This document shows, in pieces, positions 29,429 through 59,300 of a stretch of 64,000 nucleotides of DNA. A model generated the notes under the pieces. The model saw only the letters and a list, made by a program, of their open reading frames with translations. It had not been told where the DNA came from and did not search any database. The first letter of the stretch is position 1, and each line of letters begins with the position of its first letter. The DNA lies in the IMG/VR virus record IMGVR_UViG_3300045125_000168, positions 1 to 64,000 of that record; one strand, written 5' to 3'. The translations under genes were made by a program, and so were the position numbers.

Positions 29429-29455
29429 TAAGTAACATTTGCTTTCTTCCGATAA
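29429..29455 (+). promoter_or_regulatory. sigma28/FliA-like promoter
   Basis: TAAG-N15-TCCGATAA, 18 nt before ATG 29474. Confidence 0.65.
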
Positions 29456-29473
29456 GTAAAGGGGAGAGGCATC

Positions 29474-29985
29474 ATGGGGTTTTTACATCGGGTACTTTTA
29501 GCTCTCGAAAAGCCTGCGCTTGGTATGACGATCAACACCAGGGCGCAGGCTCGCCACGTTTTGTATGCTTCCAATCTCCCTAAAATGATTTGTGAGCATC
29601 TCATCAAATACGCTATTTTCCCGAATGACCAAGCTGCAAACCATTGGCTTACAGAATTGAATGCTTTTTTGGCGATCTCAAGGATGGTGTCGCTAAGACC
29701 ATTCAGGAACAAGGCCGCGACGTGCCTTACTACAAGTCGATGCACTTCAAAGCCAAGGATGTAGTTGAGGTACTAAACAGCAATATCAACTCTTCGGCAC
29801 TGCGAAGTCTTGAGAGAACAAAAAATACCCTGATCTTAGAAAAAGACTTCCCGAACATTTTGATAGAGGACCGCTTCACTACGGCTATAGCCTCACAGAA
29901 CACAAAGATAGCGAACAGGGCTACGTTTGGGTTTTGCGCTACCAAGGCAAAGTCTTGTGGCAAGGTTGACGTCCCACGACGATAA
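29474..29985 (+). CDS. Leader-tagged DUF29-like helical protein, frameshifted
   Basis: MGFLHRVLLA; ICEHLIK...HWLTELNAF resembles the HLLK...W-x-x-EI pattern. Confidence 0.4.
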
Positions 29986-30059
29986 AAGCCAACTAAAAGA
30001 TTTCGGGGGCTAACTAAAAAGCCAAAAGCCAATTCTTGACGGTGCCTTGAATTTTTTTC

Positions 30060-30087
30060 TAAAGTTTTTGCAAAAGGATTCCGATAA
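30060..30087 (+). promoter_or_regulatory. sigma28/FliA-like promoter
   Basis: TAAA-N16-TCCGATAA upstream of the XRE regulator. Confidence 0.65.
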
Positions 30088-30122
30088 TGAAAAAATTCCT
30101 CGGATTATTTAAAGGGTAGCTT

Positions 30123-30467
30123 ATGGGTCGTCGTAAGAAAATCGACAGTCCCTTTCGGACTATTCTGTGTCAATACATGGAAAACAATAAGCTAAGTGTT
30201 AGAGACGCTGCACAGATTGCTGGTGTTCCACCGTCAACTCTCGCTAACTGGCGAGCCGGTGCGTCACCGGATAACCACTTGGCACTCAAGCGACTAAGCG
30301 ATCACTTTGGCGTGAGTTTAGCCTTTTTGTTGACGGGTGAGCACGAGAAATTTGAGAGACCAGACGAGTCACTTCGCCAAAAAATACGCGAAGATCTTGC
30401 CTGTGATTGCATCGTTCTTGAAAATTCAAAATTAATTATTCAAATTTGTCGTGATGAAAAAACCTAA
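30123..30467 (+). CDS. XRE/Cro-C1-type HTH transcriptional regulator
   Basis: LSVRDAAQIAGVPPSTLANWRAGASP...LKRLSDHFGVSLAFLLTG. Confidence 0.9.
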   Translation: MGRRKKIDSPFRTILCQYMENNKLSVRDAAQIAGVPPSTLANWRAGASPDNHLALKRLSDHFGVSLAFLLTGEHEKFERPDESLRQKIREDLACDCIVLENSKLIIQICRDEKT

Positions 30468-31219: not shown

Positions 31220-31221
31220 GA

Positions 31222-31560: not shown

Positions 31561-31678
31561 AAAAATTTCCCTTTAAAATATTTTTTCCATCGTACACAAA
31601 GCCCCTCAGAAAAGAAAAGGTTTTCTTTAGCCAAAAATTATTTCTCCCTGTTAAATCAACAGTTTAAAATAATGCGCC

Positions 31679-31706
31679 TAAAGTCTAGCTGGGTTTCTTC
31701 CGAATA
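31679..31706 (+). promoter_or_regulatory. sigma28/FliA-like promoter
   Basis: TAAA-N16-TCCGAATA, 20 nt before ATG 31727. Confidence 0.6.
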
Positions 31707-31726
31707 GGGGGCCGGAGGAACGCGCT

Positions 31727-32890
31727 ATGCTTAAATATCTCTGGCTGTTTTTGGTCATAGGCTGTCAGCAGCAAGGTCATTCGGATTCGACAGAGGAACC
31801 GCAAGCTCCCGTCTCTCAAATCCCGACAGGTGCAGGTGGGAATAACAGCGGTGGTGGCAATAATGGGAATCCCTCTGTAAGCACACCCGCGAATAATGCG
31901 GCAGCAGATGAGACGCAAGAGGTCAAAATTTGGCTTGCTGGCCCTCTCCCAGGCTGCGACACCAAGAAACAGGGCGCGGCCTACTACGTGCGAGAGGAAG
32001 CTATCTTCAAATATTGTGATGGCACTACCTGGACGACCTTGGACCTAAAAGGCCCACAAGGGGCTCAGGGGGCTCAAGGACCGCAAGGACCGCAGGGCTT
32101 AAATGGCATCGCAGGAGCCACCGGACCCCAAGGGCCGCAAGGTCCGACTGGAGCGGTCGGAGCGCAAGGCCCCCAAGGACCAACAGGTGCCGCAGGGGCG
32201 CAGGGTCCACAAGGCCCAACGGGACCCCAAGGGGCTCAAGGATTGACAGGACTAACGGGACCTCAAGGGGCTCAAGGTTTAACAGGCCCGCAAGGCGCAA
32301 CCGGGCCGCAAGGTCTGCCTGGGAGTATGCGAATTTATGCGGCAAACGGTGACCTGATCGGCAACATGGCGCAGTACAATTACAGTGTGTTCAAGCAAGG
32401 CTCAGATCTCATTCAAGGGCAGCTTGTGGAACGAAATGGATATTTCGCGTTCTTCCAAACCTCTTCAACCTCTCTTGGTCTGTACGCTAATTATGGCGGG
32501 GGGCCTGCAAATTATTACTGGAATACGACTACCGCTTTGAATGGCCAGAGATTTGCCACCATGGGCTACTACACCACCGCAGATTGCTCTGGGCAAGCCT
32601 ACGCCTTTTTGACTAGCGTTGCCCCAGGCTTGGAGCAAGTCAAAAACCTTGCTTTCGCTTGGGGGTCCGGCTCTACTTATATTCCAGGCTACGACGTAGT
32701 TCGCAAAAGTCTAACTTCCTCGTCAGTCACCGTTGCTTCATACCATCGCTGCGACAATGCACCCTGCACCACACCTGAAAGTTTGACCTGCACCTCTACC
32801 AGCGGTACTTACGATGTTTTCCCCGTGCAGATCCAAGCCAAACAAGGGTGGCCAGACAAGCTAAGTGCAGGCTGGTATGTCAGCAACTAA
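31727..32890 (+). CDS. Collagen-like lipoprotein
   Basis: Lipoprotein signal (LWLFLVIGC); Cys domain LPGC...[14 protein letters not shown]; about 29 Gly-X-Y triplets (GPQGAQ...); Cys-containing C-terminal domain. Confidence 0.9.
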
Positions 32891-32915
32891 TGCATCTAGT
32901 CGAGTCGGCCAAATC

Positions 32916-33274
32916 CTAGATTTTTTTGATTTTTTGCGCCATTTGTACGGTGTCGATCTTCTGATTCCAATAATCAAGAAGAACAGCGCGATTTAAATCA
33001 AGAAACATTTGTATTTTTTTAAGGAGACTTCCTTTCAGCCTGCCTTGTATCAGTGAGCCGTCTTTGATTTTGATGCTAGGTGCTTTTTGTAGAGATTCCA
33101 TTGTGACGCGACCCTGGCCCAAAATCACTTTCACCCTTGGTCCATGCTGGCTTTCTTTGCCTTCAAATTCTCCCGCCGAAACCCAGAGGATAGCTCCGTC
33201 TACGCCTGTGCTCTTGGAGCGTAGGTTGGACATCGCTTCGATCGCAAATCTTTCAACTTGGTCTAAAAAGACAT
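32916..33274 (-). CDS. Leader-tagged DUF4160-like protein (true ATG likely 33274, needs +1 T)
   Basis: HGPRVKV...LLKKIQMFLDLNRAVLLDYWN; GGGGAG SD then ATG TCT TTT T(T)A GAC = MSFLDQVERFAIEA. Confidence 0.55.
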
Positions 33275-33293
33275 CTCCCCACCCCCTTCTAAC

Positions 33294-33321
33294 TTTTCGG
33301 CATATTATACCAAAAAACTTA
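33294..33321 (-). promoter_or_regulatory. sigma28/FliA-like promoter (also contains TATAAT)
   Basis: TAAG-N16-GCCGAAAA, 19 nt before ATG 33274. Confidence 0.55.
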
Positions 33322-33395
33322 GTAATTGAGCGAGGCATCGTTATAATGCACTAATTTTATTGCAATAACTTGGATCTTATCCTTTGTAGTGGGGG

Positions 33396-33884
33396 TCACT
33401 TCGCCCAAACGACCACATAGAAATTGTTGACGACGGCAGTGCCCATAAATTTTTGTCCTGGGTCATACATGATTGCGGCATGACCAGGGCTGTTGGTCCA
33501 ACCAGTGACCGCAGTTCGAGACGACGGATACCCGCAGGCGACAATCTCACCCGAAGCTCCTTGAGCCCCACAGGCTTGGGCTCTTTGCCAAAACTGCGAA
33601 CCGTCGCTGCCTACGTGACCGCACACATTCATGCGCGAGATATCGCGAGCATGACGCAAAGCCGCACAGTCTAGAGCCGAAGAGGTAAGCACCGTGGACA
33701 GTCCTCGGGCTTGACGTGCTGCGTTGACTTCCCGCGCAAGCTCACTCATACCAGGATTTGGGTTAGGGTTAGGACTTGGATTGTTAGGGTCGCAGGGTGG
33801 CGGATTTGTTCCTTGGACAATCACCTTTTCCTTGCTGCATGAGCCGACTGTGAGCAGTAAGCACACCAAGATAAAACCCAGCAT
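33396..33884 (-). CDS. CAP/SCP-domain lipoprotein
   Basis: Lipobox LTVGSC; PNPNP linker; VNAARQARGL, AALRHARD, GHVGSDGS, GEIVA, WTNSPGH. Confidence 0.9.
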   Translation of the reverse strand: MLGFILVCLLLTVGSCSKEKVIVQGTNPPPCDPNNPSPNPNPNPGMSELAREVNAARQARGLSTVLTSSALDCAALRHARDISRMNVCGHVGSDGSQFWQRAQACGAQGASGEIVACGYPSSRTAVTGWTNSPGHAAIMYDPGQKFMGTAVVNNFYVVVWAK

Positions 33885-33893
33885 ACACTTCCC

Positions 33894-34567
33894 CTAAATG
33901 TTGGTGATTCGTTTTCCGTGTTCATAAATCTCACGCAGTTCTTTTTGACCCTCTAGTGCTGGGATCGAAAAGCGACCGTCTTTTCCCAGCTTTGCCCCTC
34001 GTGTCCAACGCAACTCCTTGGTCTTGAACAAACGACCGTCTTGAAGTAAGGCTTGTTGGATGACATCCTTCTGCTCTTTGTTCGGGCGAAGAGTCCAAGC
34101 ATAACCGAATTGACGACTCTTGATCGGAAGGATTAAGACGAAAAATTCCTGGTCTGCTTCCTCGATATAGGTGATGTCGCTTTTCTCACTGACAAAGTGT
34201 GGACCTTCAATGGAATTGATCTTTGTGGCCCAACGCTTGAAAAACTCGCCATGGCCTTTATGCGAGCGGTTGATCTTGCCCTTGTTCTGCATGAAATCGA
34301 CATGATGGATAAGTTCATGCAGCAGGATTCGACGACGGGTTTTGTCGTCGTTCAAAATATTTTTCTGCACCAGAATCGTGGTTGTATTCGGACTTTTTGA
34401 ATCATAGGTGCATTTGCCAAGCCATGGGCTTTTGGGATTATTTACAATTTTAAAATTTGGAATAGAGATATCGGAAAGGCGGAAATATTTTCGCAATAAT
34501 TTTTCGCCTCTGTCTCAAGGGCAGAAACGGTTTTTGCGGTGACTTCAATGCGCGTCAAGAAAGACAT
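33894..34567 (-). CDS. Leader-tagged SprT-like zinc metalloprotease (frameshift at about 34500)
   Basis: WLGKC...ILLHELIHH...HKGHGEFFKRWA; ATG 34567 gives MSFLTRIEVTA. Confidence 0.85.
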
Positions 34568-34614
34568 GGCATCCTCTCGGGTTCAGATTTATTCTTAAAA
34601 AATCTTGCCCTGCC

Positions 34615-35699
34615 TTGGAGGATGCCTTGAAGTTCGCCATCATTGAGAACCATCAGCCTCTGCCCGTGAAACTCTATGGTGGTATTGAGCGCATTTCGCT
34701 GTTCCACTTCCTGGCTCAGTGCGAGCTAAAGGTCCACGAACCTTTTTTGATTTGCCTCGAAGGGTCCACCGTCTCTCACCCGGACGGACAGGTGATTCAG
34801 ATTTCCAAGGCAGACATGGCCCGATTGATGGGCGGGGACTTGCCGCTCGATGAGTTGGTTCCAGACTGCGACCTTGTGTTGACCAACACTCCAGAACGGC
34901 TTGCGCCTCTAAAAATTTCTGAAAAAACCAAGCAGGTCTGCGTCTGCCACGGGGACTTTAGGGAGCCCACTGGGAGCACCCATCAAATTTTTCTCACACG
35001 AGGGACAACTCGAATCTCACAAGAAAAGAAAACCAGATTTCGAGCAGACCCACAAAAATATCTATGTGGTGCCCAACGGTCTTGACCCTCGTGGTTTTTT
35101 GGTCCCCCGAGCCAGGGCGAGAAATTGTCTGGTTTAGCTCGATCGATGCTCGACAAAGGTCCACACCTTGTCGGTGCATTGGCAAACTTCTTGGGCCGAG
35201 AGATCGTCGCCGCAGGCAACGGCAACCCCAAGCCTTTGGCAGCGATTTGGTCGCTTATGTCGGAGCAATATCTAATGAAGCTGACAAGAGCAAACTTTTT
35301 GCCATGGCCGAGGTCTACCTACACACGGCCCATGACCCTGTGTTCAATGACCCTTGCCCGACTACGGTGTTAGAAGCGCAGATGTGCGGTGTTCCGGTCG
35401 TCGGACTCAAAAGCGGTGGGCTTTCTGAAATTGTGTACGAGCCAAAGTTTGTCTTTGAAAAGATCGAAGACCTCGCCTACTGCCTGCACGGAAAATATTA
35501 TAAAGACATCAAGCGGCAAGACGTGCGGGAATGGGCGCGAGAGCATCATAGTCACTTAGCTATGGCTCGACGCTACAACGAGGTCTTCAAAAAGGCATTG
35601 TTGGCTAGGGGTGTCCGAATATTTCGGCTTTCGTTTCTTTTTGGATTTCCAGCCAAGCTCTTCAGCTATTTTTCTTTGATAGTTTTTCTTGTAGGCTGA
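34615..35699 (+). CDS. GT4 (GT-B) glycosyltransferase, frameshifted at about 35070
   Basis: PLPVKLYGGIER N-terminal motif; DPCPTTVLEAQMCGVPVVG...GGLSEIV (EX7E-like region). Confidence 0.85.
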
Positions 35700-38296
35700 G
35701 ACATAACTGTTTCTGGACTTTTCTTCCCATTCGCCCAAAGATGAGTATTGTGAGGCATCCGCTTTACATTTTTCGTAAGACCACGAGGTCCACGACGAAC
35801 TAGCTTTGCAATCCCATGTAAGCTCCTGTCGTATGGATTCATGCCATTCTTTACTGGCGAGGTAGCTTCCCCGTGACTTCTTGGCCCACTCTGAAAAAGA
35901 AGAATACTTTGACGCCTCTGCTATACAATTCTCATATTTGAGCCAATAATCGATATTTTTGCGAACGCTCCACCCTAACTCCTGCGCTATCTGCTTTTGC
36001 CATTTATACCCGACCGCAGTGGCATAACTCGGGCTTGCGTTTGTTCTCCATTCTTTTATGGATGAAAATTGTTCTGCTTGTCTCTTACAAGCTCGGTACA
36101 AAAAGCATGGCTCGTGGCATGGGTCCAATCTAGCTCTTGAGCAATCTGTCCTTGCCATTTATTTTTACAGGCAGAAAGATAATCTTGCTGTTGAGTTTTT
36201 TCCCACTCCTTTAGGGATGAAAATTTTGAAGCCTCAGCTTTGCAATTTTCATAGATTCTGCCAGTAACCCGCTTTTTGCGAACTCTTCCAATTAAGCTCT
36301 TGAGCTATTTTTCTTTGGAAATTTCTTTCTAGACGCAGCATTATAACTAGATCTCGAACTTTTTTCCCACTTCCTTCAGGGGAAGAAAATTTCGATACCT
36401 CGGTTTTGCAATTTTCATAGGTCCATGTGTGCTAGTGTCTTGAAAATCCCAATTGAGTTCTTGGGCTATTACTTCATGCCACTTAATTTTACGGGCTGTA
36501 AGATAGCTCGCAGGTGAAGCTCTGCCCCATTCATGCGAAAGATGAATATTTCGAAGCCTCAGCTTTGCAATTTTCGTATTTTTCCCAGTGACCAAGCTCC
36601 TTGCGAACTTTCCAGTTAAGCTCTTGAGCTATCTGTCTTTGCCATTTATGGCTTAAGGCGATTTTATAACTGGATCTTGGCGTTTTTTTCCCATTCTTTC
36701 AAAGATGAGAATTTAGATGCTTGCCTCTTACAAGCTCGGTACAAAAAAATGGAACTTGACTCATCGCTCATTGATTGACGATCCAGTCCATCTTAGCTTA
36801 AAGACCATCCTTTTGTGATGCAAACTCGAAAGAGTCTGGATAGATCGTATTCCAATCTTCCAGGTTACGACACTTGCGTACTCATGCATGATTTCTTTAA
36901 AAATCCATGTATCAATTTCCAGCCTAAATCCTTACACACATGGCCGCCAACCACTCTTTTTATCCGCAAGATTGTAGGATTCTTACAACGCCATTCCGCC
37001 AAGCGTGAGTATCTTGATGCTATCCGCTTACAATCTTCATAGGTTGGCCAGTTGCTTGACTTTCTAATTCGTTCCATGGCTTCGCTGAGAGTAATTAACT
37101 TCTGGTCCTTGAAACATGAGATGAACGACGAAAAGGATTCGATGTATTTTTTATCAAACGTAAAGTTGATATGCTCAAGAGGTTGATTGTCTGAACTAAA
37201 ATTCGGTTGAAATTCAGGGATTTTTAGTTTGGACTTTTGACCATCCCAGGCTTCATAGATTTCCGTGACTGAAAGGGGCCAGCACACCCGCCATGATGAC
37301 TTTGAACTCGTCTACATGGTCTACAGGTGTCGCTTGAGATATTCCTTCTCAACATGACTATCTTGTGGTCGCCTACAAAGCCTTCCCAGTATTTGATCTA
37401 TTCGTTCGATATTTCGCATGAACGTCAAGTCTAATACCTGATTCAAGTTAGGGTAGTCGAACCCGATCTGGGCACGATCTACCACGATCAGTACATCAAA
37501 CTCCCATTTGCAAACTGTTTCAATATTTTAAGGTCTTTATCAGATTCGGAATGAGATACTGCAACCTTATACCTCAGAACTTGTTTTAGGCTCTTAAACA
37601 GCCGTTCTGCTGCGTCAATATTATGTGTGATAATCAAAGATTTCTGTGTTGGTTTTATCAGCTTTTTGATGCCATCAATCAGCTTTTTGGAAGTCTTTTT
37701 CTTCCTTCAATTTGCCCATCGCAGAGTAGTCATTGACCAGATCTAATGTAAACATCGTAGGGATTAACTTTACCGAGATATCTGGGATCTTATTATTTTC
37801 AAACAGTTGTTGTCTGGAGCACAAACCTTCGAGCAAATAAAATTAAAATGCGTTGCTGTGAGTAAAAGTTGCTTTTTTGGGCCAATTTTATCGATAATTT
37901 TATTGACCATTTGCTCATTATAAAATTGATGAGCTTCGTCGATAATTATGATGTCAAATTTTTGCTTTCCCCTTGAGGAGATCGAGTTTCGGATAGATTG
38001 TTTGCGGAAGACTGACAACTACAGAAAAGTTTTCGCTGCCCTTCAAGTCCGTGGCTTTTTTGATGATACAAGAAATTCAATTTTAGCGGCTTTGAAGCCG
38101 AAAAGTTCTCCCGTATCTCTTTTCGACCATGTGTTAAAACCAGAATCCTTTTTTTCTGTTTAACCCAATCCTCAATCAAAGACCAGGATAGGACCGTCTT
38201 GCCGTACCCCGTACTACCACCTAGAAGCACAACATCGTGTTTGCGAAAGAGCTTTAAAATTTTCTTTTGATCCGCTTGGATATCTGTCAGCTTCAT
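35556..38296 (-). CDS. Superfamily II (DEAH, ResIII-like) helicase fused to a C-terminal array of ~48-aa repeats; many frameshifts
   Basis: GGSTGYGKT, IIIDEAH, LLTATH and VLIVVDRAQIGFDYPNL...QILGRL, followed by repeats W-x-YE-x-CK-x-EASKYSS-x-x-EW...SY-x-x-A...W...IAQEL-x-W (35556..37040). Confidence 0.8.
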
Positions 38297-38367
38297 CTAT
38301 CAACCTACCTGCACAACCTCAAAAACCCGATTCTTAAGAGTGCAAGAAGTGTGAAAGCGTAGGGCAC

Positions 38368-38404
38368 TGACACTATTGTCTTCTGGTCGTGCCAAATAGT
38401 GTCA
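38368..38404. promoter_or_regulatory. Inverted repeat TGACACTATT-N17-AATAGTGTCA overlapping a TTGACA on the minus strand upstream of the helicase
   Basis: Perfect 10-bp arms in an intergenic region. Confidence 0.5.
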
Positions 38405-38423
38405 AAAGATTTACACATGTCAG

Positions 38424-38750
38424 TTATTTCTCGACCAGTTGTTTTGCGAGTTGGTCGTAGGCACGATTGATTGCCGCAGCTTTCGTCTCGTCACCACCTC
38501 GATCTGGGTGATTGGCAAGCATGGCTTTGCGGCGGGCCGCTTTTAGCTCTTTAATAGTCTCTGGCATTTCGCTCAAGCCAAGGAGAGCTAAATTGCCGCC
38601 TGCGACGGGCTTAAGGACGTTTTCGGCTTGCCGTGCCCACTGATCGGGACTTCCCGCAGGCCCATCTTTGTAACGCTTATACCGATCAAAAACCCTTTGA
38701 GCGTTTTTTTTCTTCGTTCTTTTTCTTTTTCATCGTTGTTATTCATCATT
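38424..38750 (-). CDS. J-domain (DnaJ-like) protein; start approximate
   Basis: LLGLSEMPETIKELKAARRKAMLANHPDRGGDETKAAAINRAYDQL contains the HPD motif. Confidence 0.8.
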
Positions 38751-38829
38751 CAAATCCTTGGAGAAAGCAGAGGCAATCAAATGATGATCTGAAAAAATCC
38801 CTCTTGGAATTGCCAGCACACATAAAAAT

Positions 38830-39832
38830 CTAAAAATCCTCGTCTTTCAAATTATCGACTTCCTCTTGCTGCTTTCTGAAAGCGGCGAGACCTGACTCTT
38901 GTTGCTGGGTTATTATGATATCGTCTAAATCAATTTTTTTGTGTTTCATAAATGTCTCCTGGATTCCTAGCCCAGCTATCAGCAGGGCCAAAGTTTTTGA
39001 TACGATGCTGCAAAATATCCTGAGCAATTTTATTTTGCTCAACTTGAAAAATACTCGCGATGAGTGTCACACTAATCATCCCTGCGATTTCTTCCACATC
39101 GCTCCAGCGTGGCTCGTCATTATTTGCAATCCAAGCGATTGCATCACGGTAACTAGCGCGTTTCATCATGATCTCCGACAAAGAGTGCAAACACCATCTT
39201 TGTGTAAAGTCATTTGCGCACAATGCTTGCAAAATTTGAAATTCATGATCTCTCCGAACAAGAGGTGCAGATATCATCTTTATCCAATTTTCTTGATGCT
39301 TTGCTCAAGGGCAGGAACAACGGCTCGCAGATGCTTACAGTCCCGTTGTCTATCCCCACGCTTGAAAACCCATCCAGGGCAAGAGCACTCCCAATCACCG
39401 GAGCTTTTGATTGCGCGATGACATAGATCCTGTCGAATGTTTCCGACCTTATTTCCATCCGGTAGCGATGGGTTGCATTGTCAGGTAGAACTTCGAGACC
39501 AAGATTGCTTGCAATTTTTTTAGTGCTTTAGACATAAGTATCTCCTTGTTCCGACCACACTCAAACCACATGTTAAGTGTCTGTAATCACAATACTTTAT
39601 TTGGTTTTTTAGCTATCCTCACTACGGTGTAGCCATGTTCTTCGAGTATTTCTAAGAAAGCACACGCTTGCACATCATACTGATCTCCCGTCGTGAGAAT
39701 CAGTCGAGATGTCGCCTTGTCTACCCTGGATACCATCGTTTCTGCTGTGTAATTTCTAAAAATGGAGGCAACAATTTTACGGCGTATACGCCGAGCTTGG
39801 ATCAATTTTCTTTCTGTCTTTCTCATGTCCAC
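38830..39832 (-). CDS. Cluster of 3-4 small hypothetical phage genes
   Basis: ORFs 39587..39832, about 39243..39530, 38930..39277 and 38830..39042 with strong SDs (AGGAGG, AAGGAG). Confidence 0.5.
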
Positions 39833-39920
39833 TTCCTCCTCCTGTATTCTACTTTTCGGAAGTTTTTAAAAATAGTTTAGAAAGTACAGGTTAAATACCT
39901 GTAATCACTAGACTTTATTT
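39568..39920 (-). promoter_or_regulatory. Two copies of a 35-bp upstream motif (39568..39602 and 39886..39920)
   Basis: acatgttaagtgtctgtaatcacaatactttattt vs acaggttaaatacctgtaatcactagactttattt, 29/35 identical; each lies upstream of a minus-strand gene. Confidence 0.7.
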
Positions 39921-39943
39921 TTTAAGATGATTGAAAATGAGGC

Positions 39944-40021
39944 AACTACTCGAAATTTTCGAGTAGTTCACTTGTGAGGCGATTTTGATTCAGGTGAGTC
40001 ACTCGTGATTCAGGTGAGTCA
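39944..40021. repeat. Palindrome AACTACTCGAAA-T-TTTCGAGTAGTT (39944..39968) plus 2 x TGATTCAGGTGAGTCA (39986..40001, 40006..40021)
   Basis: Directly visible; each 16-mer is itself nearly palindromic. Confidence 0.8.
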
Positions 40022-40040
40022 GTCTTCCCAGCGGATACGC

Positions 40041-41557
40041 TTATCGTCTTCGTCTTTTTGAGCTTGACGACTTCGATGCGGAATTTTTCGGTGAGATAGG
40101 CTTGGTACCTTTTTTGTACATGCCCATGCAGATCCCAGTTTCATCGACAAAATCACGGATAATCCCAAATTTTTTGGGCTCTCCGTTCTCGTTGACGTAG
40201 GGAGTTCGCACCCGCGAATACTCTTGGTAAAAGTTTCCGCTCACCTGACCTTGTTCATTGAATATCACGTTGCCCGTGGGAAACGCGGAGTAATAGCAGT
40301 TCCATCGCGGGACATCGATACCAGTGAGCATCCGAGCGTTGCTCACGAGCACTTGAATTTTCCCGCTCCGTGCATCTTCCAAAACCTCTTCGCGGTTCGG
40401 CAAACCCCCATAAAAAGCAGCGGCTCGAATACCCTCTGCTTTGAGCCGCTCGACAAATTGCTGCAACTGAGCCACGGAGTAGGAGTGGAACGCGAAACAA
40501 ATGTAGTGTCCCGCAGCCACATCTTTTTCGAGATACTGCATGATGATTTTCATGCGCTCTTTGTTGGCATACAAACGCTTGTGCAGCCGTGGGAACGGCT
40601 CGTTAAAACCAAAGGCTACTTTAATGCCAGTGTGAACCACGGTGACCGAGCACGGCACTTGCCGCGATTTGCCCTCGGCAGTCACAGGGCCGATGATGTC
40701 TCGCAACAAAACTCTCTTGCCATCAACACGCTCAACCGTCCCTGTGAGGCCGAGACGATATTTAGCTGCGAGTTTATTCACCGTCGAGCTAAAGACAACG
40801 CCACCGAGCTTATGAGCTTCATCGCAGATCACAAGACCCCAAGCGTTGGCGTACTTTTCAATGCGCTCATCTCCGTGAGTCCTGCCTGTGCTCTTTTTAA
40901 GGGCTTTGGTGCCAAAGGTCTGCCAACACAAAAAGCAGACATCCAATTCCTCGGGATTATCGTAGTCCCCAAAAAAGCCGACGATCTCGCCCCGCGCATC
41001 TCTTTTCTTGGCAAAAGGCGAGCGGTGCTTTTCGCGCAATTCCTCGATATTGGTGAAGTTCAGGAAAGTATTATAGAACTGCTGCAAAAGGTCTTTTGGT
41101 GAGCAATGATGAGCGTCTTGAGCTTGAGTTGAGACAGGATATAGATGCTGGTCACCGTTTTTCCAAACCGTGGACTAGCTCGTATCACTCCGTTTTTGAC
41201 TTTGAGCCAAGCCGAGGCCGCTTCGAGTTGACCTTTTCCGTGCTCCTGCCAATTAAAAAGCCCACCTGTGAATCTCAGGTCACTCGTCATGGGTGGAGTC
41301 GCGGTCAAGTCCTGCCAAGGCAGATCCCCAAACAGCCGACCGACCTTAGCTATGTTGCCCCTAGCAAAGCCGAAGTAGAAGTCGTCGCCAAGTTTGACTT
41401 TATTAAAGGTGCGGATTTGCCGCACACCGGAAGCAAATTGATTGAAGTCTGCCTCGTCCTCGTCATTTTCCAGACTATAGACAAATTGCGATAAAGCCCG
41501 GTCGCTGACGTATTCAACGGGCACATACAATCGGTCTGAGAGGAGACAAGACTTCAC
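40041..41557 (-). CDS. Superfamily II helicase (UvsW/XPB-like), frameshift at about 41080
   Basis: ASPRFGKT, VICDEAH, LGLTGTVERVDG, LTGIDVP, QEYSRVRT. Confidence 0.9.
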
Positions 41558-41566
41558 ATAGGCCCC

Positions 41567-42013
41567 TTATTTGATGAGATGTAAAAGGTCAGGTGCATAT
41601 TTTTTAAGCATCTCACGAGCAAGCTGTTCCTCATCCCAACTAGCATCGACCGCTCTCAACTTTTTTGCCCACACCAAAAACTCTGATCCTGCTTTGTCGA
41701 GAATTTTATTTTTGCCCGTGACGATGGTGCAGGTATGCACGAAATCCTGGTACGCCTCTTGGAAAGCGCGGTTGCGGTCGAAGCGTGATTTTGTCTTCAC
41801 CTTCTTGGGATCGAACATCTCCGAGATTTTTTGAAGAGACGCCCTATCTCTGCATCCCAAGAGTGGTCATACGCCAAGACTTTTGCATATTGGTCGCACA
41901 CAAATTCATCAAAAGCACCGTTGAGCCGTGAGCGCATGAGATCAGCCCAACGGTCTCGATTGTAGGCCATTGCGAAAATGCGATATTGGCGTTTAATTTT
42001 TTTTAAAAAACAT
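41567..42013 (-). CDS. Leader-tagged hypothetical protein (MFFKKIKRQYRIFA-MAYNRDRW..., needs a -1 correction in an A8 run)
   Basis: GAGGA SD before ATG 42013; MAYNRDRW..LNGAFDEF resembles the 29474 and 63818 proteins. Confidence 0.5.
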
Positions 42014-42018
42014 TCCTC

Positions 42019-42614
42019 TTAATCCAATGACATCATACTAATAATAATTGTACGGCTTAAAAACTTAGCGTCTTTCTTGCCCCACAAAAGAGTTTCTCTT
42101 TTTTTAACTTCGTTCCAAGTTTTCGCCTCGAAAAGGGTTCCATGCTCATTTGTCAAATACACAAACAAACCTCTTTTTAATGCTTCTTCTGTGCGGCTCT
42201 TGGTCCATTTTTTCGCCTTCGGGAGTGTTTTCTTCACCAAGAACAACAATCCCATACCGAGGCAGCAATTCTTCAAACAAGCAGTAGACACCTAACGGCA
42301 AGCCATTGATGCGCAAACTTTGGCACTATCTCTTTTCCATATTTGTTCTAACAGGATACCCTTATGCAGAGGACGGAAATTAAGAAAAAATGATATTGGA
42401 GCTTCCGTATTGGCTTCCAAAAGACTATCGAGGTATCGTAAAGATTTAAGCTACCTTTGGCGTCCTGATAAAGGATCTCCGCTGTTTTAGATTTAAGCCA
42501 TTTTGCAGCTTCTCTGTTTTTTTCTGGGTGTACTAAATCATGCTCAAGCCGGTCTACCTGCCTTGGGGCAGAGGTGACTATGTATTTTGCTTTGATGCGC
42601 TGATTGGAATCCAT
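42019..42614 (-). CDS. Leader-like N-terminus hypothetical protein, frameshifted
   Basis: MDSNQRIKAKYIVTSA; ORFs 42348..42614 and 42019..42291. Confidence 0.45.
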
Positions 42615-42632
42615 TGTGCTTCCTCTAGGTAA

Positions 42633-42659
42633 GTATCGGCACTTAAACCAAAAACCTCA
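42633..42659 (-). promoter_or_regulatory. sigma28/FliA-like promoter
   Basis: TGAG-N15-GCCGATAC, 18 nt before ATG 42614. Confidence 0.55.
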
Positions 42660-42713
42660 AGGGTCCCCAAAATAGGCAAAACAGTAAATATTTGTTTTTA
42701 TTATACAAAGTAA

Positions 42714-42729
42714 TGTTTCACGTGAAACT
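42714..42729. other. parS: parS centromere-like site
   Basis: TGTTTCACGTGAAACT matches the chromosomal parS consensus TGTTTCACGTGAAACA at 15/16; perfect 14-bp palindromic core; intergenic. Confidence 0.75.
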
Positions 42730-42734
42730 ACTGA

Positions 42735-43115: not shown

Positions 43116-43124
43116 ACCTCTCCT

Positions 43125-46749: not shown

Positions 46750-46755
46750 TCTAAT

Positions 46756-48238: not shown

Positions 48239-48607
48239 TCAAAAATAAAGGCGATTAAATCGGGAAAAAGGGAGTCCAGTCGGTGTCCTCGGAGAAAAGC
48301 CGTAAGAACTCCCCGAGCCTTCAAAAGCATGGGTGCAATTGGCAGGTATCACTAGCAAGTCGCCCGGACCAACGGTGACGGAAATCCCCTCAAAATGAAA
48401 TGTAGGCGGGTCTTTTTCCGAAGCCGCTAGACATAACCGCAACTCCTGATCAGTATGGTAATGCCAACGGGCAAACGTCTTTCGCATCTCCGCACTTGCC
48501 TGACTGGTGTCCACACGGTCGTAGCGTGTGCAGGCATGAACTTGCAGCATCTCGTCAATGCTGTTCAAGAATGCTTGAGGGTCCACTTTGAAATGCGAGA
48601 AAACCAC
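48239..48607 (-). CDS. Cupin-domain protein (may continue by frameshift toward 47700)
   Basis: WHYHTDQE...VGPGDLLVIPANCTHAF cupin motifs. Confidence 0.7.
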   Translation of the reverse strand: MVFSHFKVDPQAFLNSIDEMLQVHACTRYDRVDTSQASAEMRKTFARWHYHTDQELRLCLAASEKDPPTFHFEGISVTVGPGDLLVIPANCTHAFEGSGSSYGFSPRTPTGLPFSRFNRLYF

Positions 48608-48972
48608 TATGGCTCCTTGCGGTCAATCGCATCCATCTCAGTCCGAAGATCATCAATATCCATGCCGTCGTCATACCACATCTTGAGGTATGCATGTTGG
48701 TACTTTTTCACATGCTCTACGATCATTTTCAGTTCAGATGAGTTAAGAAAAACGTCTCCCACAACACGAAAATCTCGCAGCATGATCGAAAAGTTTGGCC
48801 CTGTTTCAGGGCTACCTTTGAACACCTTGATGCGTTCCGCGTGAGGGTGACGTTTATCCCCAGGCTGAAGGACATTGAACTTTATGCCCTGAGGTAAAGG
48901 CAAGCGATATACCCGCTGCGGCACGTTTGCCATGGCATGAACTAGGTTATCAATTTGTGGCAAAAAACTCAT
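48607..48972 (-). CDS. Leader-tagged DUF4160-like protein
   Basis: MSFLPQIDNLVHA-MAN; RHPHAERIKV...ELKMIVEHVKKYQHAYLKMW; pattern similar to 32916..33274. Confidence 0.55.
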   Translation of the reverse strand: MSFLPQIDNLVHAMANVPQRVYRLPLPQGIKFNVLQPGDKRHPHAERIKVFKGSPETGPNFSIMLRDFRVVGDVFLNSSELKMIVEHVKKYQHAYLKMWYDDGMDIDDLRTEMDAIDRKEP

Positions 48973-49000
48973 GGGTTATGACTCACCCCCAACCAACGTT

Positions 49001-49027
49001 ATATCGGCAAAAACGAAGAAAAACATA
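49001..49027 (-). promoter_or_regulatory. sigma28/FliA-like promoter
   Basis: TATG-N15-GCCGATAT, 28 nt before ATG 48972. Confidence 0.5.
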
Positions 49028-49111
49028 ACACCATTTTTTTCAAATCAAATTGATATGTTATCGGTGAGACCCCCGCCCTGAAAATCGGGGATTTACGGCG
49101 CGTTCGCCAAA

Positions 49112-49351
49112 TCAATCCAAAATCTGCAAAACCGTGCGTTTTTTCTCTTTACCTGCAATCGCGTAGACGATGGTGCGGATCGCGTCTGCCGTGCGTCCTT
49201 GTCTGCCGATGACTTTCCCTACATCATCTGGGTCCACGGTGACCTCGATGATTTTTGACATCTCCCCATCGACTTCGTTCACATGCACTGCGTCTGGGTT
49301 ATCCACAAGCCGCTTAATAATCATAAGAACCAACTCGGATACTCCGCTCAT
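49112..49351 (-). CDS. khpA: KH-domain RNA-binding protein KhpA (YlqC/UPF0109)
   Basis: LVDNPDAV...VDPDDVGKVIGRQGRTADAIRTIV, single KH domain with GxxG loop, 79 aa. Confidence 0.92.
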   Translation of the reverse strand: MSGVSELVLMIIKRLVDNPDAVHVNEVDGEMSKIIEVTVDPDDVGKVIGRQGRTADAIRTIVYAIAGKEKKRTVLQILD

Positions 49352-54763: not shown

Positions 54764-54824
54764 AGTTGTTCCCAGAAAGCAAAAGCGCCTGCCACGTCCC
54801 GTGTTGCAAGCAATTCCGATAAAC

Positions 54825-55490: not shown

Positions 55491-55493
55491 GCA

Positions 55494-56871
55494 CTAAATG
55501 GTGACCTCAGAGGCAGTATCATCCTCATCATCGATAGAAACTCTGCCCTTACTCGCCTTACTGCTCTTGCTCGGCTTGGTGTCGGGATTGTTCTTCAAAT
55601 ACTCATAATAAAGCTCTTGGGCTTTGCCTTGGCGGATTAACTCAAACCCAGCGTTTCGGAGTTTTGTCCCCTGCTCATCACTTAAAATCATAGCTTTGAA
55701 CTTTTGCCAAGTGATGTCACCCTCGAATCCTGAGAGCGAGATGTGCATAGTGTTGCCCATCTTCTCTTGCATGAGACCGCAGTGCTTCAGAAACATGAAG
55801 GTATCGTATACGGGGTCGATGCCCATCCCTGGTGTGCCTGCGGAGTCAAGCCAGAGACGATATTCCATATTGCGGAAGCTCGGACCAAATTTGTTTTTCT
55901 GGATTTTGGCGGTGCCGATGAAATAGCGGTCTTCGCCATGCCCATCGACCGTCTTTTCCGTAATCATCTTGGATTGACTACGCTTGGCTTCGATGCGCAA
56001 TTTGAAGTCGGGATAAAATTGAACGGAAGATCCCCCTGGCTCACTTTCGGGATTCTGAAACATCGCCATGGGGTTGATCGTCAAGTGGTTGGTGACAAGC
56101 CACGCGCAATTTTTGCGTCCGATGTAAGACTTTACCAGCGGGAAATGCGCGGCAAAGCAGCGGGCTTGAATGGCAACAGGCTCTTTCTCGGGCTCTTCAT
56201 CACGCGCTTCGGGGAGCATCGCTTTAAGCGAGTCGGTGATAAAAAGCATCTGGGGAGCGAAGTTTTCCGCTTCGACCACGAGCTTCTTTCAAACCTTCGT
56301 TAATGTGTCTCCAGGTCGGCTTGTACTCATACTCGTTCGCAATCAAGAAGTAGCGGTAGCAGCTTTCTTTATCGTCCCAAAGTTGGATTTTATCGGGCAG
56401 CTTTTTGAGAATGCTGTTCATATACCGAAATGTACTCTCAGCCGTAGTGCCAATGGCATAACGAAGCTGAGGAGTCACTTCCCAGGTGCCCTTTTTATTG
56501 CGGAACCCACACAGTTTATTCAGATCAAGCCCGATATTTTGCAGATAAGTCGGGTCGAATGACGACTCGTGGTCATTAGCTACCACTAAGGTCTGACGGG
56601 CGATCGCTTCTTTAATGGTATGGAAAAGAAACGTGCTCTTACCCGCACCTGTCGGACCTACGAGCGACGACATACGGCCTGGAGCAAAGCCTCCACCCAT
56701 AATGAGGTCTAAGGATAAAAGACCGCTCGAAATCGCTCCATTGACTCGCATGGACGGGTCCATCGTGCTGTAGACAAGCCCTTGGTTGTGGGCGGCATCG
56801 TCCAGAACCTTGTTGATATCCATGATCGACTGCAAACCGTCAAATTGCGTCAAAAGCGCATCTTGCGCCAT
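55494..56871 (-). CDS. recA: RecA/UvsX recombinase, one frameshift at about 56280
   Basis: SSGLLSLDLIMGGGFAPGR; GPTGAGKST; TDSLKAM; LVTNHL; EPGGSSVQFYPDFKLRI. Confidence 0.93.
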
Positions 56872-57095
56872 GGTATGCCCCGTTGTTCTCTCGTGATCTT
56901 AGCTCCGAGCATACCGCGCCAAGGGGTTTGTGCAACGTGGACTATTTCTCGATAGTGCCTCTTAAAGGGATTATCGTAAAATACTACACTGCTTCTTGCG
57001 ATTCCTTGCAAACTTTAGTTTCAACAGAACGCGACAACAAAAATCCATCTGTTGAACTGGTACAGGTATATTTTTCTGCCACTTTTCTGAAGAAA

Positions 57096-58950
57096 CTATA
57101 CATTCACCTTACCCCCAACCTTGCACACGGCTCGAACTTCTTCTTCCGTGAATTTTTTTGAGTTTTCTCCGCACAAAAAGTCTTTACGGACTATCTTGGG
57201 TGCTCCCTCAAGCGACATCAGATTGTTCCAGGTGCAATAAAAACTGCCACCGACTTCCTTAGGAGATCCTTTCAATGATTCTATTTTATTTGTAGTACAA
57301 TCGAATGATTGCCCGACAAATTCTGGTGCTCCCTCAAGAGTTTTGAGATCATTCATTCGGCATTCGAAATAAAGATGAACCTTCTTGGGTCCGGCAACTA
57401 AAGACTGAAGTTTGTTTCCGCTGCAAATAAAAAATCCGTCAATTCTTTCCGGTGCTCCTTGCAGAGACACCAGCGCATTTTGACCGCAATCAAAATGTTG
57501 ACCAACTTTCTTGGGACCACCTTTCAAAGACGTCAGTCTATTGCGAGCACATTTAAAAATGCCGCCCACCTCTCTTGGTCCTCCGTCGAGAGAAAGGAGT
57601 TTGTTGTCACTGCAATAAAAATCACCCGTGACGATATCCGGTGCTCCGACAGAGACGTCAACCCTAGACCCGAAGCGTTCACATTACCCTTCTCGTCTGC
57701 CTGCCATTTGAAGGTGAATACTTCCATCTCAAACGAAGGTATTTTCAAATCGTCTGGAAGAGAAGAATGCTTTTGATCTAGGCTATCCCAAACAGTCACT
57801 TGACCTTGCATATCCTTGAGAAGAGCGATCTTAAACCAGGGGTCTTTCGAGTCTCTGGTCTTTGAGATCAGAAAATAAATATTGTTTTTGCGGCTATACT
57901 CTTGCCAATAATGACTACTTTCATGCTTGATGCACCACTCGGTCCCTTGACCTAACTTAGAAGACGCTTCGTTCGTGGTGATCTGATAAACTGTCCACTC
58001 GTCGTTCGCTGTAATAAAGATTGCTCCAGGAATTTTTTCCCGGAGATCAACCTTGCCTTTTTTCTTCTCCGTTGCGGTCTTGGTCTTTTCTAAGTCCTCC
58101 ACTCTTTCTTGAAACTCTTTAAAAGACCTAGACCCCAAAGGTCGATATTTTTTTCATCGTCTTTGAGCTTGTTGCGATCCCTCAGCTTTTTAAATCGATC
58201 AAGGTAGTCTTGGACCTGAGCTTTCTCAATACCCTGATCTAAGAATTTCTTCTCAACCGTTTTGAAGTCTGATGTGACAACGTATTTCGCGAGAACTTGT
58301 TTGAAAAAGCCGCTACATCGAAAAGCCCTCTTAGCAGGAGATTCTGTATTTTTGCAGCGACCTTCTGCTGGAACGAAGGAAAGTTTTTCAGATACTCCTG
58401 TTCGTCGATCAGGCCCACCTGGACATAATCAAACCCGTGCAGCTTACAGACTTTTTGTGTCGGAAACCCACCCTTAACGATACCAGTACACACCTGTCCG
58501 ACCAACTCGGTGAAAAGAGCCGTGTGCGCCTTAGGGGACACAACTTTCAACTGGCGATTGTAGACACCTAGCTCACCTCCAGATCAAACCTGTGCCCGCG
58601 ACCTTTTTTATAGCCTGCAAGGTGACCTAGAGCGTCATGAACAGCCCTAAAAATATGATTCTCTTCTTCGGTCCAAACCGGATGAGAAGAATGCCCTGTA
58701 TAAACTTTAGGACACGGTTTTGCTGCACGTCTTGCCGCATGTCTTCCATGCTGCGGTAAGGGTCGATCTCCGTGAACTCAAACTGGAACTGACTTTGCAG
58801 ACGTTTGTACATGGTCTTGAGATTGACTATCAAAGCCTTCCAGCTTTCGACATACTCTGCTTCAAACTTCGGTCGAGCGAGGTAAGCCTCAGCGACCTTA
58901 TGGGCGTAAGAGTTGTAATTGGGAAGGACGAGCTTGGCTTCGACGTGCAT
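57096..58950 (-). CDS. Multidomain (polyvalent-type) protein: HD/H-motif domain, W-C (PcfJ-like) domain and leucine-rich repeats; joined across frameshifts
   Basis: MHVEA start; DPYRSMEDMRQDV...HPVW..EENHIFRAVHDALGH...GELGVYNRQ...ALFTELVGQ; ASSKLGQGTEWCI; at least 6 LxSLxG[AS]PxxVG repeats. Confidence 0.65.
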
Positions 58951-58995
58951 ATATCCCCCGTGTGCGACTTGAAAAAATCTTTCACAGGGGGAGTG

Positions 58996-59083
58996 CGGAG
59001 AGAGTGGGATTTGAACCCACGTTACCCTTTTGGGGTAAACTCGCTTTCCAAGCGAGCGCCTTCAGCCACTCGGCCACCTCTCC
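58996..59083 (-). tRNA. trnS-GGA: tRNA-Ser(GGA), CCA not encoded
   Basis: GGAGAGGTGGCCGAGTGGCTGAAGGCG, anticodon arm CTCGC-TTGGAAA-GCGAG, long variable arm, T-arm GTGGGTTCAAATCCCAC, acceptor TCTCTCC-G. Confidence 0.95.
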
Positions 59084-59272
59084 TCACGCAGCACTACCCG
59101 AGCACTTATATTCTGTGCTCCACGCGCAGCGTACTATATGGAGAATCAATCTTATGGGCCAAAAGATTGATTTCCAAGGTATAGCCCCTCTTGCCGTTGA
59201 TGAGGGGGCATACTCCCGCTTTTTCTCCTGTGTCCACAGGCTATTACGCTGCTCCCTTTTCACTATTTTTGC

Positions 59273-59300
59273 TAAAGTTTTTCAGGCTTTATGCCGATAA
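59273..59300 (+). promoter_or_regulatory. sigma28/FliA-like promoter (best match)
   Basis: TAAAGTTT...GCCGATAA (TAAA-N16-GCCGATAA), 27 nt before ATG 59328. Confidence 0.75.

What the first reader, a model, noticed from the sequence alone, without database searches (positions are those of the whole stretch)
29429..59300. Seven flagellar sigma28 (FliA)-type promoters drive the phage accessory genes
Seen: TAAG-N15-TCCGATAA (29429+), TAAA-N16-TCCGATAA (30060+), TAAA-N16-TCCGAATA (31679+), TAAG-N16-GCCGAAAA (33321-), TGAG-N15-GCCGATAC (42659-), TATG-N15-GCCGATAT (49027-) and TAAA-N16-GCCGATAA (59273+). All are intergenic, correctly oriented and 18-35 nt before a start codon. Four precede leader-tagged genes. 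Established: the sigma28 consensus is TAAA-N15-GCCGATAA, and FliA-type promoters dominate attack-phase transcription in Bdellovibrio bacteriovorus. Inference: the phage wires a regulon (payload proteins, XRE regulator, collagen lipoprotein) to the host motility/attack-phase sigma or to a phage-encoded sigma28 homologue, coupling its programme to host life-cycle stage.
Basis: partly seen in the sequence, partly recalled or inferred. Interest (0 to 1): 0.8.

Follow-up and report, generated by a model that had tools for sequence, protein, structure and literature searches.

The report
Flagellar-sigma promoters in a giant phage
A giant uncultured phage carries at least 14 promoter-like sites matching the bacterial flagellar sigma factor (sigma28/FliA), mostly in front of small add-on genes, which suggests it times those genes to its host's motile stage, though no expression data could be obtained.

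Summary
All seven motifs exist at the stated coordinates and are more than chance. There is an eighth in the window (39879-) and six more further along the same contig, giving 14 in 160 kb. Each lies 18-49 nt before a Shine-Dalgarno sequence plus start codon. The regex TAA[AG]-N15-17-CCGAWA gives 14 hits against 4.3±2.1 simulated. The -35 box co-occurs with a downstream start at Fisher p=2e-6. CCGATAAG is the top upstream 8-mer in an unbiased scan.

The window is the first 64 kb of a 351.6-kb jumbo-phage contig. Related phages keep a collinear SbcD-helicase-DnaB block. Here three lineage-specific islands interrupt that block, and they hold six of the eight window sites, so "accessory genes" is supported. 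One relative has a near-consensus site before a lipoprotein cassette.

No sigma-70-family gene turned up in the window or in the 160 kb examined (45% of the contig). A TnpB 84% identical to one in Oligoflexus (Bdellovibrionota) hints at the host phylum. The commonest spacing (N16) equals the published Bdellovibrio FliA consensus.

Best reading: host FliA-RNA polymerase drives accessory cassettes.

The parts
29429..29455 (+). P1: TTAAG-N16-CCGATAAG, sigma28-type promoter-like site
   Evidence: Exact match to the B. bacteriovorus consensus TTAAG-N16-CCGATA. 18 nt to the ATG at 29474. Lies in island A.
29474..29764 (+). 96-aa ORF of unknown function behind P1
   Evidence: No family match. No homologue in the related phages.
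30060..30087 (+). P2: CTAAAGTTTTT-N10-TCCGATAA, near-consensus sigma28-type site
   Evidence: 15/16 matches to the E. coli consensus. 35 nt to the ATG at 30123.
30123..30467 (+). XRE-type helix-turn-helix regulator (114 aa) behind P2
   Evidence: Pfam HTH_3 8e-6; PHROG transcriptional regulator 6e-10.
31679..31706 (+). P3: CTAAAG-N16-CCGAATA
   Evidence: The -10 box deviates (CCGAAT). 20 nt to the ATG at 31727. Lies in island B.
31727..32890 (+). Collagen-repeat lipoprotein (387 aa; N-terminus with lipobox VIGC) behind P3
   Evidence: Pfam Collagen 3e-14; PHROG tail-fibre families via the repeats. A 92% identical copy occurs in another sample.
33294..33321 (-). P4: CTAAG-N17-CCGAAAAG
   Evidence: 13/16 matches to the E. 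coli consensus. 19 nt to the ATG at 33274.
32916..33274 (-). DUF4160-like gene behind P4, interrupted by a probable homopolymer frameshift after codon 3
   Evidence: Pfam DUF4160 9e-4. Paralogue of 48607-48972. Frame analysis.
39853..39879 (-). P8 (new): CTAAAC-N15-CCGAAAAG
   Evidence: Preceded by an 11-bp-stem terminator-like hairpin at 39944-39968. 20 nt to the GTG at 39832.
39587..39832 (-). 81-aa ORF of unknown function behind P8
42633..42659 (-). P5: TTGAG-N16-CCGATAC. Weak -35 box.
   Evidence: Lies in island C. Reads towards the 88-aa ORF 42348-42614 and onward into the conserved helicase.
42348..42614 (-). 88-aa ORF of unknown function behind P5
49001..49027 (-). P6: TTATG-N16-CCGATAT. 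Weak -35 box.
   Evidence: 28 nt to the ATG at 48972. Sits just downstream of the KhpA-like gene 49112-49351.
48607..48972 (-). 121-aa DUF4160-like protein behind P6, followed by an ARD/cupin gene at 48239-48607
   Evidence: Orthologues at 56-77% identity occur in other metagenomic contigs.
59273..59300 (+). P7: CTAAAGTTTTT-N10-GCCGATAAG, the best site
   Evidence: At least 15/16 to the E. coli consensus and the top PWM score, 30 bits. 27 nt to the ATG at 59328.
59328..59615 (+). 95-aa ORF of unknown function behind P7
25159..30463 (.). Island A: insertion between DnaB and the conserved 251-aa gene; holds P1 and P2
   Evidence: In 12 or more related contigs these genes abut. GC is 0.454 against 0.47-0.50 for the neighbouring core genes.
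31561..40040 (.). Island B: insertion between the conserved 112-aa gene and the helicase; holds P3, P4 and P8
41567..43127 (.). Island C: insertion between the SbcD-like gene and the helicase; holds P5

Best explanation
The window belongs to a jumbo phage contig of about 350 kb. It carries a distinct class of promoters with the sigma28 (FliA/SigD) architecture: CTAAAGTTTT, a 10-11 nt spacer, then (G/T)CCGATAAG. There are at least 14 such sites in the 160 kb I could read.

Each site sits 18-49 nt ahead of a ribosome-binding site and start codon. Transcripts would therefore start a few bases after the -10 box and carry short leaders.

The sites do not serve the structural or core replication genes. 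They head small cassettes that were inserted, in this lineage only, between conserved core genes. The cassettes encode an XRE regulator, a collagen-like lipoprotein, two DUF4160-like proteins and several orphan ORFs. Further along the contig they also encode MoxR/CbbQ-type ATPase, CobT-like and NIF3 genes.

The most likely reader is the host's own RNA polymerase carrying the host flagellar sigma factor. These cassettes would then be expressed only when the host is in its motile state. In Bdellovibrio that state is the attack phase.

Shown: the motif, its enrichment, its placement, and the accessory nature of the genes.
Inferred: promoter activity, which sigma reads the sites, the host, and the timing.
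For: Motif presence and match to the published consensus.

Enrichment.

Position test independent of gene calls (p=1.8e-6 and 6.7e-6).

Unbiased k-mer scan: CCGATAAG is the top upstream 8-mer, with 5 of its 9 copies upstream of starts.

Predictive power: a matrix built from the window sites found new sites outside the window, directly before SD+ATG. One start equals the JGI gene call.

Alternative promoter class: sigma70-type promoter matches are not enriched in the same region.

Accessory islands by synteny with 12 or more relatives.

A related phage (64% DnaB identity) has CTAAAGTTT-N11-TTCCGATAAG before a 57-aa ORF plus a 460-aa lipoprotein. The cassette is antisense, between the DNA polymerase and SbcD genes.

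No sigma gene in the window or up to 161.6 kb: and the Pfam lists.

[quoted passage not shown] The nearest DnaB matches here are phiRSL1, BcepSauron and PaBG. Placing those phages in group 3 is from my own knowledge, not from a tool result.

Host hint: the Bdellovibrionota TnpB. The commonest spacing, TAAAG-N16-CCGATA, equals the B. bacteriovorus consensus and is one base longer than in E. coli.
Against: 55% of the contig is unread, so a phage sigma gene cannot be excluded.

Host assignment rests on one mobile-element gene.

Four of the eight window sites are individually weak by leave-one-out scoring.

Most related contigs show no strong site around the conserved block.

Bdellovibrio phage phi1402 has none.

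Clear intrinsic terminators behind the cassettes were not found, so the transcription units are not delimited.

The assembly has indel errors that could alter spacer lengths.
Confidence: 0.55

Rival explanations
1. The sites are read by a phage-encoded sigma28-like sigma factor located in the unread 190 kb of the contig. They would then form a phage-timed (middle) class rather than a host-state sensor.
For: Only 160 of 351.6 kb could be inspected. Sigma70-type promoters are not enriched, so the phage may use its own specificity factors. Some jumbo phage groups do encode sigma factors (PMC7824862).
Against: No Sigma70_r2/r3/r4 domain in 186 window ORFs or in the JGI gene lists to 161.6 kb. The only faint region-4 hits are helix-turn-helix repeats in a GIY-YIG endonuclease with no region 2. 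The motif is the canonical cellular sigma28 consensus, not a divergent one. The sites avoid structural and late-type genes and sit in accessory islands.
Confidence: 0.2
2. The motifs are passengers. The accessory genes were captured from a host chromosome together with their native FliA promoters, and the sites may be weakly used or unused by the phage.
For: The sites lie in lineage-specific insertions with slightly lower GC. In B. bacteriovorus, FliA promoters precede many surface-protein and protease genes (PMC3627812). The cassettes include a lipoprotein, and CAP-domain and S8-protease genes lie in the same accessory regions.
Against: Most genes behind the sites are orphans whose only detectable homologues are in other phage-like contigs. 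The motif is kept close to consensus at 14 places, and in a second phage, which argues for selection. Even if captured, the sites would still be read by host sigma28.
Confidence: 0.12
3. The sites are not promoters. They are chance matches, or binding sites for a phage DNA-binding protein such as the XRE regulator.
For: Four of the eight window sites are weak on sequence alone. At loose thresholds the background gives a few hits: about 2.3 expected at >=13/16.
Against: The two-box structure with fixed spacing, single orientation towards the gene, constant distance to the start codon, and p about 1e-6 for the position association. There are also two or more near-perfect 16-mer matches against 0.01 expected.
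Confidence: 0.08

Closest known systems
Sigma28 (FliA / SigD / WhiG) class promoters of flagellar regulons. E. coli consensus: TAAAGTTT-n11-GCCGATAA (PMC2859248).
   Same: Both boxes, their order, and the spacing within one base. P2 and P7 match at least 15 of the 16 consensus positions.
   Different: The sites are on a phage genome, in front of non-flagellar genes of mostly unknown function. The commonest spacing is one base longer than in E. coli. FliA dependence is untested.
FliA-type attack-phase promoters of Bdellovibrio bacteriovorus: TTAAG-N16-CCGATA in 92 of 140 mapped attack-phase starts (Karunker et al. 2013, PMC3627812).
   Same: Same boxes and the same commonest N16 spacing. P1 and the site at contig position 98810 match exactly. 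The use is the same too: a flagellar sigma driving many non-flagellar genes, including surface proteins.
   Different: Those promoters are chromosomal and experimentally mapped. Here the host is unknown, with only a Bdellovibrionota-like TnpB as a clue, and nothing is mapped.
Phage 'morons' / accessory cassettes with their own promoter (named from my own knowledge).
   Same: Lineage-specific insertions between conserved genes, each with its own promoter-like site and sometimes on the opposite strand. Examples are P1-P3 here and the cassette in the relative L172.
   Different: Classical morons are described in temperate phages with sigma70-type promoters and a terminator. Here the promoter class is sigma28, terminators are unclear, and the phage looks like a jumbo virulent type.
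Prophage-borne flagellin / csrA-tldR loci that contain a FliA-dependent promoter (bioRxiv 10.1101/2025.07.22.666180).
   Same: A phage-carried gene set wired to the host flagellar sigma factor.
   Different: That case concerns flagellin remodelling genes at a single locus. Here 14 dispersed sites precede unrelated accessory genes, and no flagellar gene was seen.
Phage-encoded sigma regulons, such as SPO1 gp28/gp34 and T4 gp55, and the sigma factors of 'group 2' jumbo phages (PMC7824862).
   Same: A dedicated promoter class distinct from the host housekeeping one.
   Different: Those promoters serve middle and late genes, including structural ones, and the sigma gene is on the phage. Here no sigma gene was found in 160 kb, and the structural genes lack the motif.

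Membership tests
sigma28 (FliA)-dependent promoter | -35 box TAAA(GTTT) and -10 box (G)CCGATAA separated by about 11 nt (TAAA-N15/16-GCCGATAA) | tested here: met
   All 8 window sites and 6 further sites. Two or more sites match at >=15/16. Consensus taken from PMC2859248 and PMC3627812.
sigma28 (FliA)-dependent promoter | More frequent than chance, and placed upstream of genes in the sense orientation | tested here: met
   14 against 4.3±2.1. Fisher p=1.8e-6 for -35 box against downstream SD+start. CCGATAAG is the top upstream 8-mer.
sigma28 (FliA)-dependent promoter | Transcription starts a few nt downstream of the -10 box | not testable with these tools
sigma28 (FliA)-dependent promoter | Activity requires FliA (genetic or in vitro) | not testable with these tools
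   Needs reporters in fliA+/fliA- cells or in vitro transcription.
sigma28 (FliA)-dependent promoter | A FliA-type sigma is available in the infected cell (host or phage) | tested here: inconclusive
   No phage sigma in 160 of 351.6 kb. Host unidentified; a Bdellovibrionota-like TnpB is the only clue.
accessory ('moron'-like) cassette | Gene absent from the syntenic position in related phages | tested here: met
   Islands A, B and C interrupt a block that is contiguous in 12 or more relatives. The genes behind P1-P5 and P8 have no homologue there.
accessory ('moron'-like) cassette | Own promoter and own terminator | tested here: inconclusive
   Promoter-like sites are present. A convincing terminator was seen only upstream of P8. 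Folds downstream of the cassettes are unconvincing.
phage-encoded sigma regulon | Sigma-70-family gene on the phage genome | tested here: inconclusive
   None in the window or up to contig position 161.6 kb. 190 kb is unread.
phage-encoded sigma regulon | The promoter class serves middle/late genes, including structural ones | tested here: not met
   No site scoring 14 bits or more in the structural block 1-25 kb or near the head-fibre and tail genes.

The most novel reading that the evidence does not exclude
This is a giant phage of a predatory Bdellovibrionota host. It has moved its accessory, and possibly its early, programme onto the attack-phase sigma factor FliA. The logic would be that free-swimming attack-phase cells, where FliA dominates transcription, are the only stage a phage can reach. 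That would be a phage regulon built on an alternative host sigma as a life-stage sensor, and sigma28 cassettes would be a marker for phages of such hosts.
Probability: 0.2. Interest if true: 0.8.

Novelty: new variant of a known kind. Interest (0 to 1): 0.58.

Why it matters
Phage promoters are normally described as sigma70-type or as targets of phage-made factors. A dispersed set of canonical flagellar-sigma promoters on a phage would be different. It would mean the phage reads the host's motility or developmental state directly through an alternative host sigma.

If the host is a Bdellovibrio-like predator, it would give a first view of how phages of predatory bacteria schedule gene expression.

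It also gives a simple, testable sequence signature. The strict motif already hits more than 120 places in IMG/VR, and some contigs carry several hits. Finally, it supplies a set of portable sigma28 promoters of graded strength.

Tried and rejected
- Alternative genetic code as the cause of the short ORFs. Rejected: no stop-codon reassignment lengthens the ORFs coherently. The split genes (UvsX, helicase, TnpB) are intact in relatives, so indels are the cause.
- Close relatives in the phage database by DNA or by the 682-aa protein: none.
- Single-protein scans of IMG/VR for two window genes returned only the source contig.
- The strict motif scan of IMG/VR gave more than 120 unrelated contigs.
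- TnpB paralogues as entry points to the rest of the contig: only one copy found.
- First metagenome scan, with the 251-aa protein: nothing.
- Conservation of P3 and P6 in close relatives failed. The 92%-identical collagen gene lies on a 1.4-kb contig that starts 4 nt before the gene. The contig with the 77% orthologue of the P6 gene had no retrievable DNA. The only IMG/VR relative (37% identity) has no intergenic space.
- Host clues from the protein atlas were uninformative. PfkB gave a mix of phyla and KhpA gave Myxococcota as the commonest.
- Another recurrent upstream k-mer (AAGATT) showed no coherent motif.
- An accession guessed from memory (NC_019521) turned out to be Sphingomonas phage PAU, and JF344710 does not exist in the collection.

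Full report
**What the window is.** The 64-kb window is the first part of IMG/VR entry IMGVR_UViG_3300045125_000168 (236,430 bp). That entry is itself positions 1,760-238,189 of JGI contig Ga0494335_066 (351,605 bp). It encodes a baseplate-J/wedge protein, a DnaB-type helicase, a second helicase, a UvsX/RecA-type recombinase and two tRNA-Ser genes. Further along are a family-A DNA polymerase with an intein, PhoH, homing endonucleases and a 940-aa head-fibre-like protein. The best phage matches of DnaB are jumbo phages (phiRSL1, BcepSauron, PaBG) at about 32% identity. So this is a novel jumbo phage.

Several genes are split into overlapping ORFs: UvsX, the helicase and TnpB. They are intact in relatives, and no alternative genetic code explains the splits. 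The assembly therefore carries indel errors. That matters for exact spacer lengths and for one start codon discussed below.

**Checking the observation.** All seven strings are at the stated coordinates, with the stated spacers and strands. A start codon follows 18-35 nt after each -10 octamer.

An eighth site, TAAA-N15-TCCGAAAA at 39853-39879(-), precedes the gene 39587-39832. It is itself preceded by a strong terminator-like hairpin.

At site 4 the ATG opens only three codons. Adding one T to the T5 run joins it in frame to the gene 32916-33233. The resulting N-terminus resembles that of the paralogue behind site 6, so this is most likely an assembly indel.

**Is it more than chance?** I used the published E. 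coli consensus TAAAGTTT-n11-GCCGATAA (PMC2859248) as an a-priori model.
- The window has two sites with at least 15 of 16 matches, against 0.0125 expected. It has seven with at least 13, against 2.3 expected (third-order Markov simulations).
- Two of those seven (38077+, 45256-) are on the wrong strand or lack the CCGA core. That count matches the chance expectation.

I then walked along the contig with the look-up of encoding contigs to position 161,612.
- A matrix built only from the window sites found new high-scoring sites outside the window. All sit just before a Shine-Dalgarno sequence and ATG. They are 104851(+), in front of the N-terminal part of a MoxR/CbbQ-type ATPase gene; 104204(-), in front of a CobT-like gene; and 102272(-), in front of a NIF3 gene whose start equals the JGI call.
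- A regex test added 98810(+), an exact TTAAG-N16-CCGATA, plus 141444(-) and 150374(-).
- In 160 kb the regex TAA[AG]-N15-17-CCGAWA occurs 14 times against 4.3±2.1 simulated.
- Among all 155 CCGAWA hexamers in the first 140 kb, 8 of the 10 with a -35 box are followed by SD+start+ORF. Only 14 of the 145 without a -35 box are (Fisher p=1.8e-6).
- In an unbiased k-mer scan of the regions -100 to -15 of 217 SD-supported starts, CCGATAAG is the top 8-mer.
- Sigma70-type promoter matches are not enriched.
- Leave-one-out scoring shows that P5 and P6 especially, and P1 and P3 to a lesser degree, are weak on sequence alone. Their case rests on placement.

**What the sites drive.** No strong site precedes the structural block (1-25 kb) or any other structural gene seen. 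The genes behind the sites are:
- an XRE regulator;
- a collagen-repeat lipoprotein;
- two DUF4160-like paralogues, one followed by an ARD/cupin gene;
- four orphan ORFs;
- outside the window, MoxR/CbbQ, CobT-like and NIF3 genes and further orphans.

A metagenome scan with DnaB recovered 18 related contigs at 57-100% identity. In at least 12 of them, SbcD, the helicase, a 112-aa gene, a 251-aa gene and DnaB are contiguous. In this phage the block is interrupted by three insertions with no homologues in the relatives:
- island A, 25,159-30,463 (P1, P2);
- island B, 31,561-40,040 (P3, P4, P8);
- island C, 41,567-43,127 (P5).

So six of the eight window sites head lineage-specific accessory DNA. 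P5 can additionally read into the conserved helicase.

One relative (L172/L173, 64% DnaB identity, similar GC) has a near-consensus site, CTAAAGTTT-N11-TTCCGATAAG. It lies in front of a 57-aa ORF and a 460-aa lipoprotein, as an antisense cassette between the DNA polymerase and SbcD genes. The other relatives show no strong site in the 10-kb flanks.

**Which sigma factor?** No Sigma70_r2/r3/r4 domain was found in 99 called ORFs plus 87 gap ORFs of the window. None was found in the precomputed Pfam lists for contig positions 54.8-161.6 kb. The only faint region-4 hits belong to a 665-aa GIY-YIG endonuclease with repeated short helix-turn-helix modules and no region 2.

[quoted passage not shown] That the closest DnaB relatives here belong to that group is from my own knowledge, not a tool result.

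The motif is the canonical cellular sigma28 consensus, and the sites avoid late-type genes. Together these points favour the host's FliA. However, 190 kb of the contig remains unread.

**Which host?** A frameshifted TnpB (61,581-62,625) is 84% identical in protein and 75% identical over 1,077 nt to an element of Oligoflexus tunisiensis (phylum Bdellovibrionota). The next genome hits are at 36-49%.

The commonest spacing, TAAAG-N16-CCGATA, occurs in about 10 of the 14 sites. It equals the B. bacteriovorus attack-phase consensus TTAAG-N16-CCGATA (92 of 140 mapped starts; PMC3627812). It is one base longer than the E. coli consensus.

These are hints, not proof. The atlas look-ups were uninformative. 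The cultured Bdellovibrio phage phi1402 has no such site, and phiMH2K has only one weak one.

**Mechanism proposed.** Host RNA polymerase with FliA initiates a few bases after each CCGAWA box. That produces short-leader mRNAs for accessory cassettes whenever the host is in its FliA-active (motile or attack) state. A phage that adsorbs to swimming cells would meet exactly that state. This step is inference.

**Rivals.**
- A phage sigma28-like factor encoded in the unread part of the contig.
- Promoters captured passively together with host genes.
- Non-promoter sites.

**Known or new?** Sigma28 promoters and their expanded role in Bdellovibrio are known. A FliA-dependent promoter inside a prophage flagellin-regulation locus has also been reported. 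In four literature searches I found no description of a phage carrying a dispersed set of sigma28-type promoters for non-flagellar accessory genes. I rate it a new variant of a known kind, of moderate to good interest. Its value depends on transcript mapping and host identification, neither of which could be done here.

Noticed in passing
window 55494-56871(-), 40041-41557(-), 24054-25158(-), 33263-33274(-): UvsX/RecA, the helicase, possibly DnaB, and the DUF4160 gene are each split into overlapping or adjacent ORFs. The helicase is one intact 497-aa gene in relative L172. This suggests homopolymer or indel errors in a long-read assembly rather than real pseudogenes.
   Followed up: partly
window 45507-46749(-) and 61581-62625(-): Two frameshifted IS200/IS605-type TnpB elements with conserved right-end (omega-RNA-like) sequence. 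The second is 75% nt identical over 1,077 nt to an intact 348-aa TnpB in Oligoflexus tunisiensis, and 69-73% aa identical to copies in two other IMG/VR contigs.
   Followed up: partly
whole contig (JGI Ga0494335_066, 351,605 bp): IMG/VR keeps only positions 1,760-238,189 of the contig, as if it were a provirus. The 113 kb on the right and the 1.7 kb on the left were never seen here. They could be host DNA or more phage.
   Followed up: no
window 58995-59083(-) and 62893-62981(-): Two tRNA-Ser genes (anticodons GGA and GCT). P7 is divergent from the first.
   Followed up: no
window 33396-33884(-); contig positions about 118.3-118.9 kb and 131.5-132.1 kb: Three CAP (cysteine-rich secretory protein) domain paralogues at 28-40% identity, plus two S8 peptidase loci and a collagen-like lipoprotein. 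This is an unusually rich set of secreted or surface-type proteins for a phage.
   Followed up: no
IMG/VR loci L013, L038, L073 (IMGVR_UViG_3300025087_000061) and others: The strict pattern TAAAGTTTTT-N11-CCGATA hits more than 120 stretches of IMG/VR, and several unrelated contigs carry 2-3 hits each. Other phages may also use sigma28-type promoters.
   Followed up: no
L155 (Bdellovibrio phage phiMH2K) 3336-3372(+): A weak sigma28-like site, TCAAGTTT-N11-ACCGATAG, followed by AAGGAG and an ATG in an intergenic stretch. It is not significant in a 4.6-kb genome.
   Followed up: no
contig positions about 85.7-86.5 kb (L133 12324-13106) and L172 17-3208: The family-A DNA polymerase carries an intein. 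In the relative it is one 1,063-aa ORF; here it is in pieces.
   Followed up: no
L175 and L180 (sample Ga0129333): Short contigs from another sample carry 88-100% identical copies of DnaB and island A genes, and a 92% identical collagen lipoprotein. A very close relative of this phage therefore exists elsewhere and shares at least parts of islands A and B.
   Followed up: partly
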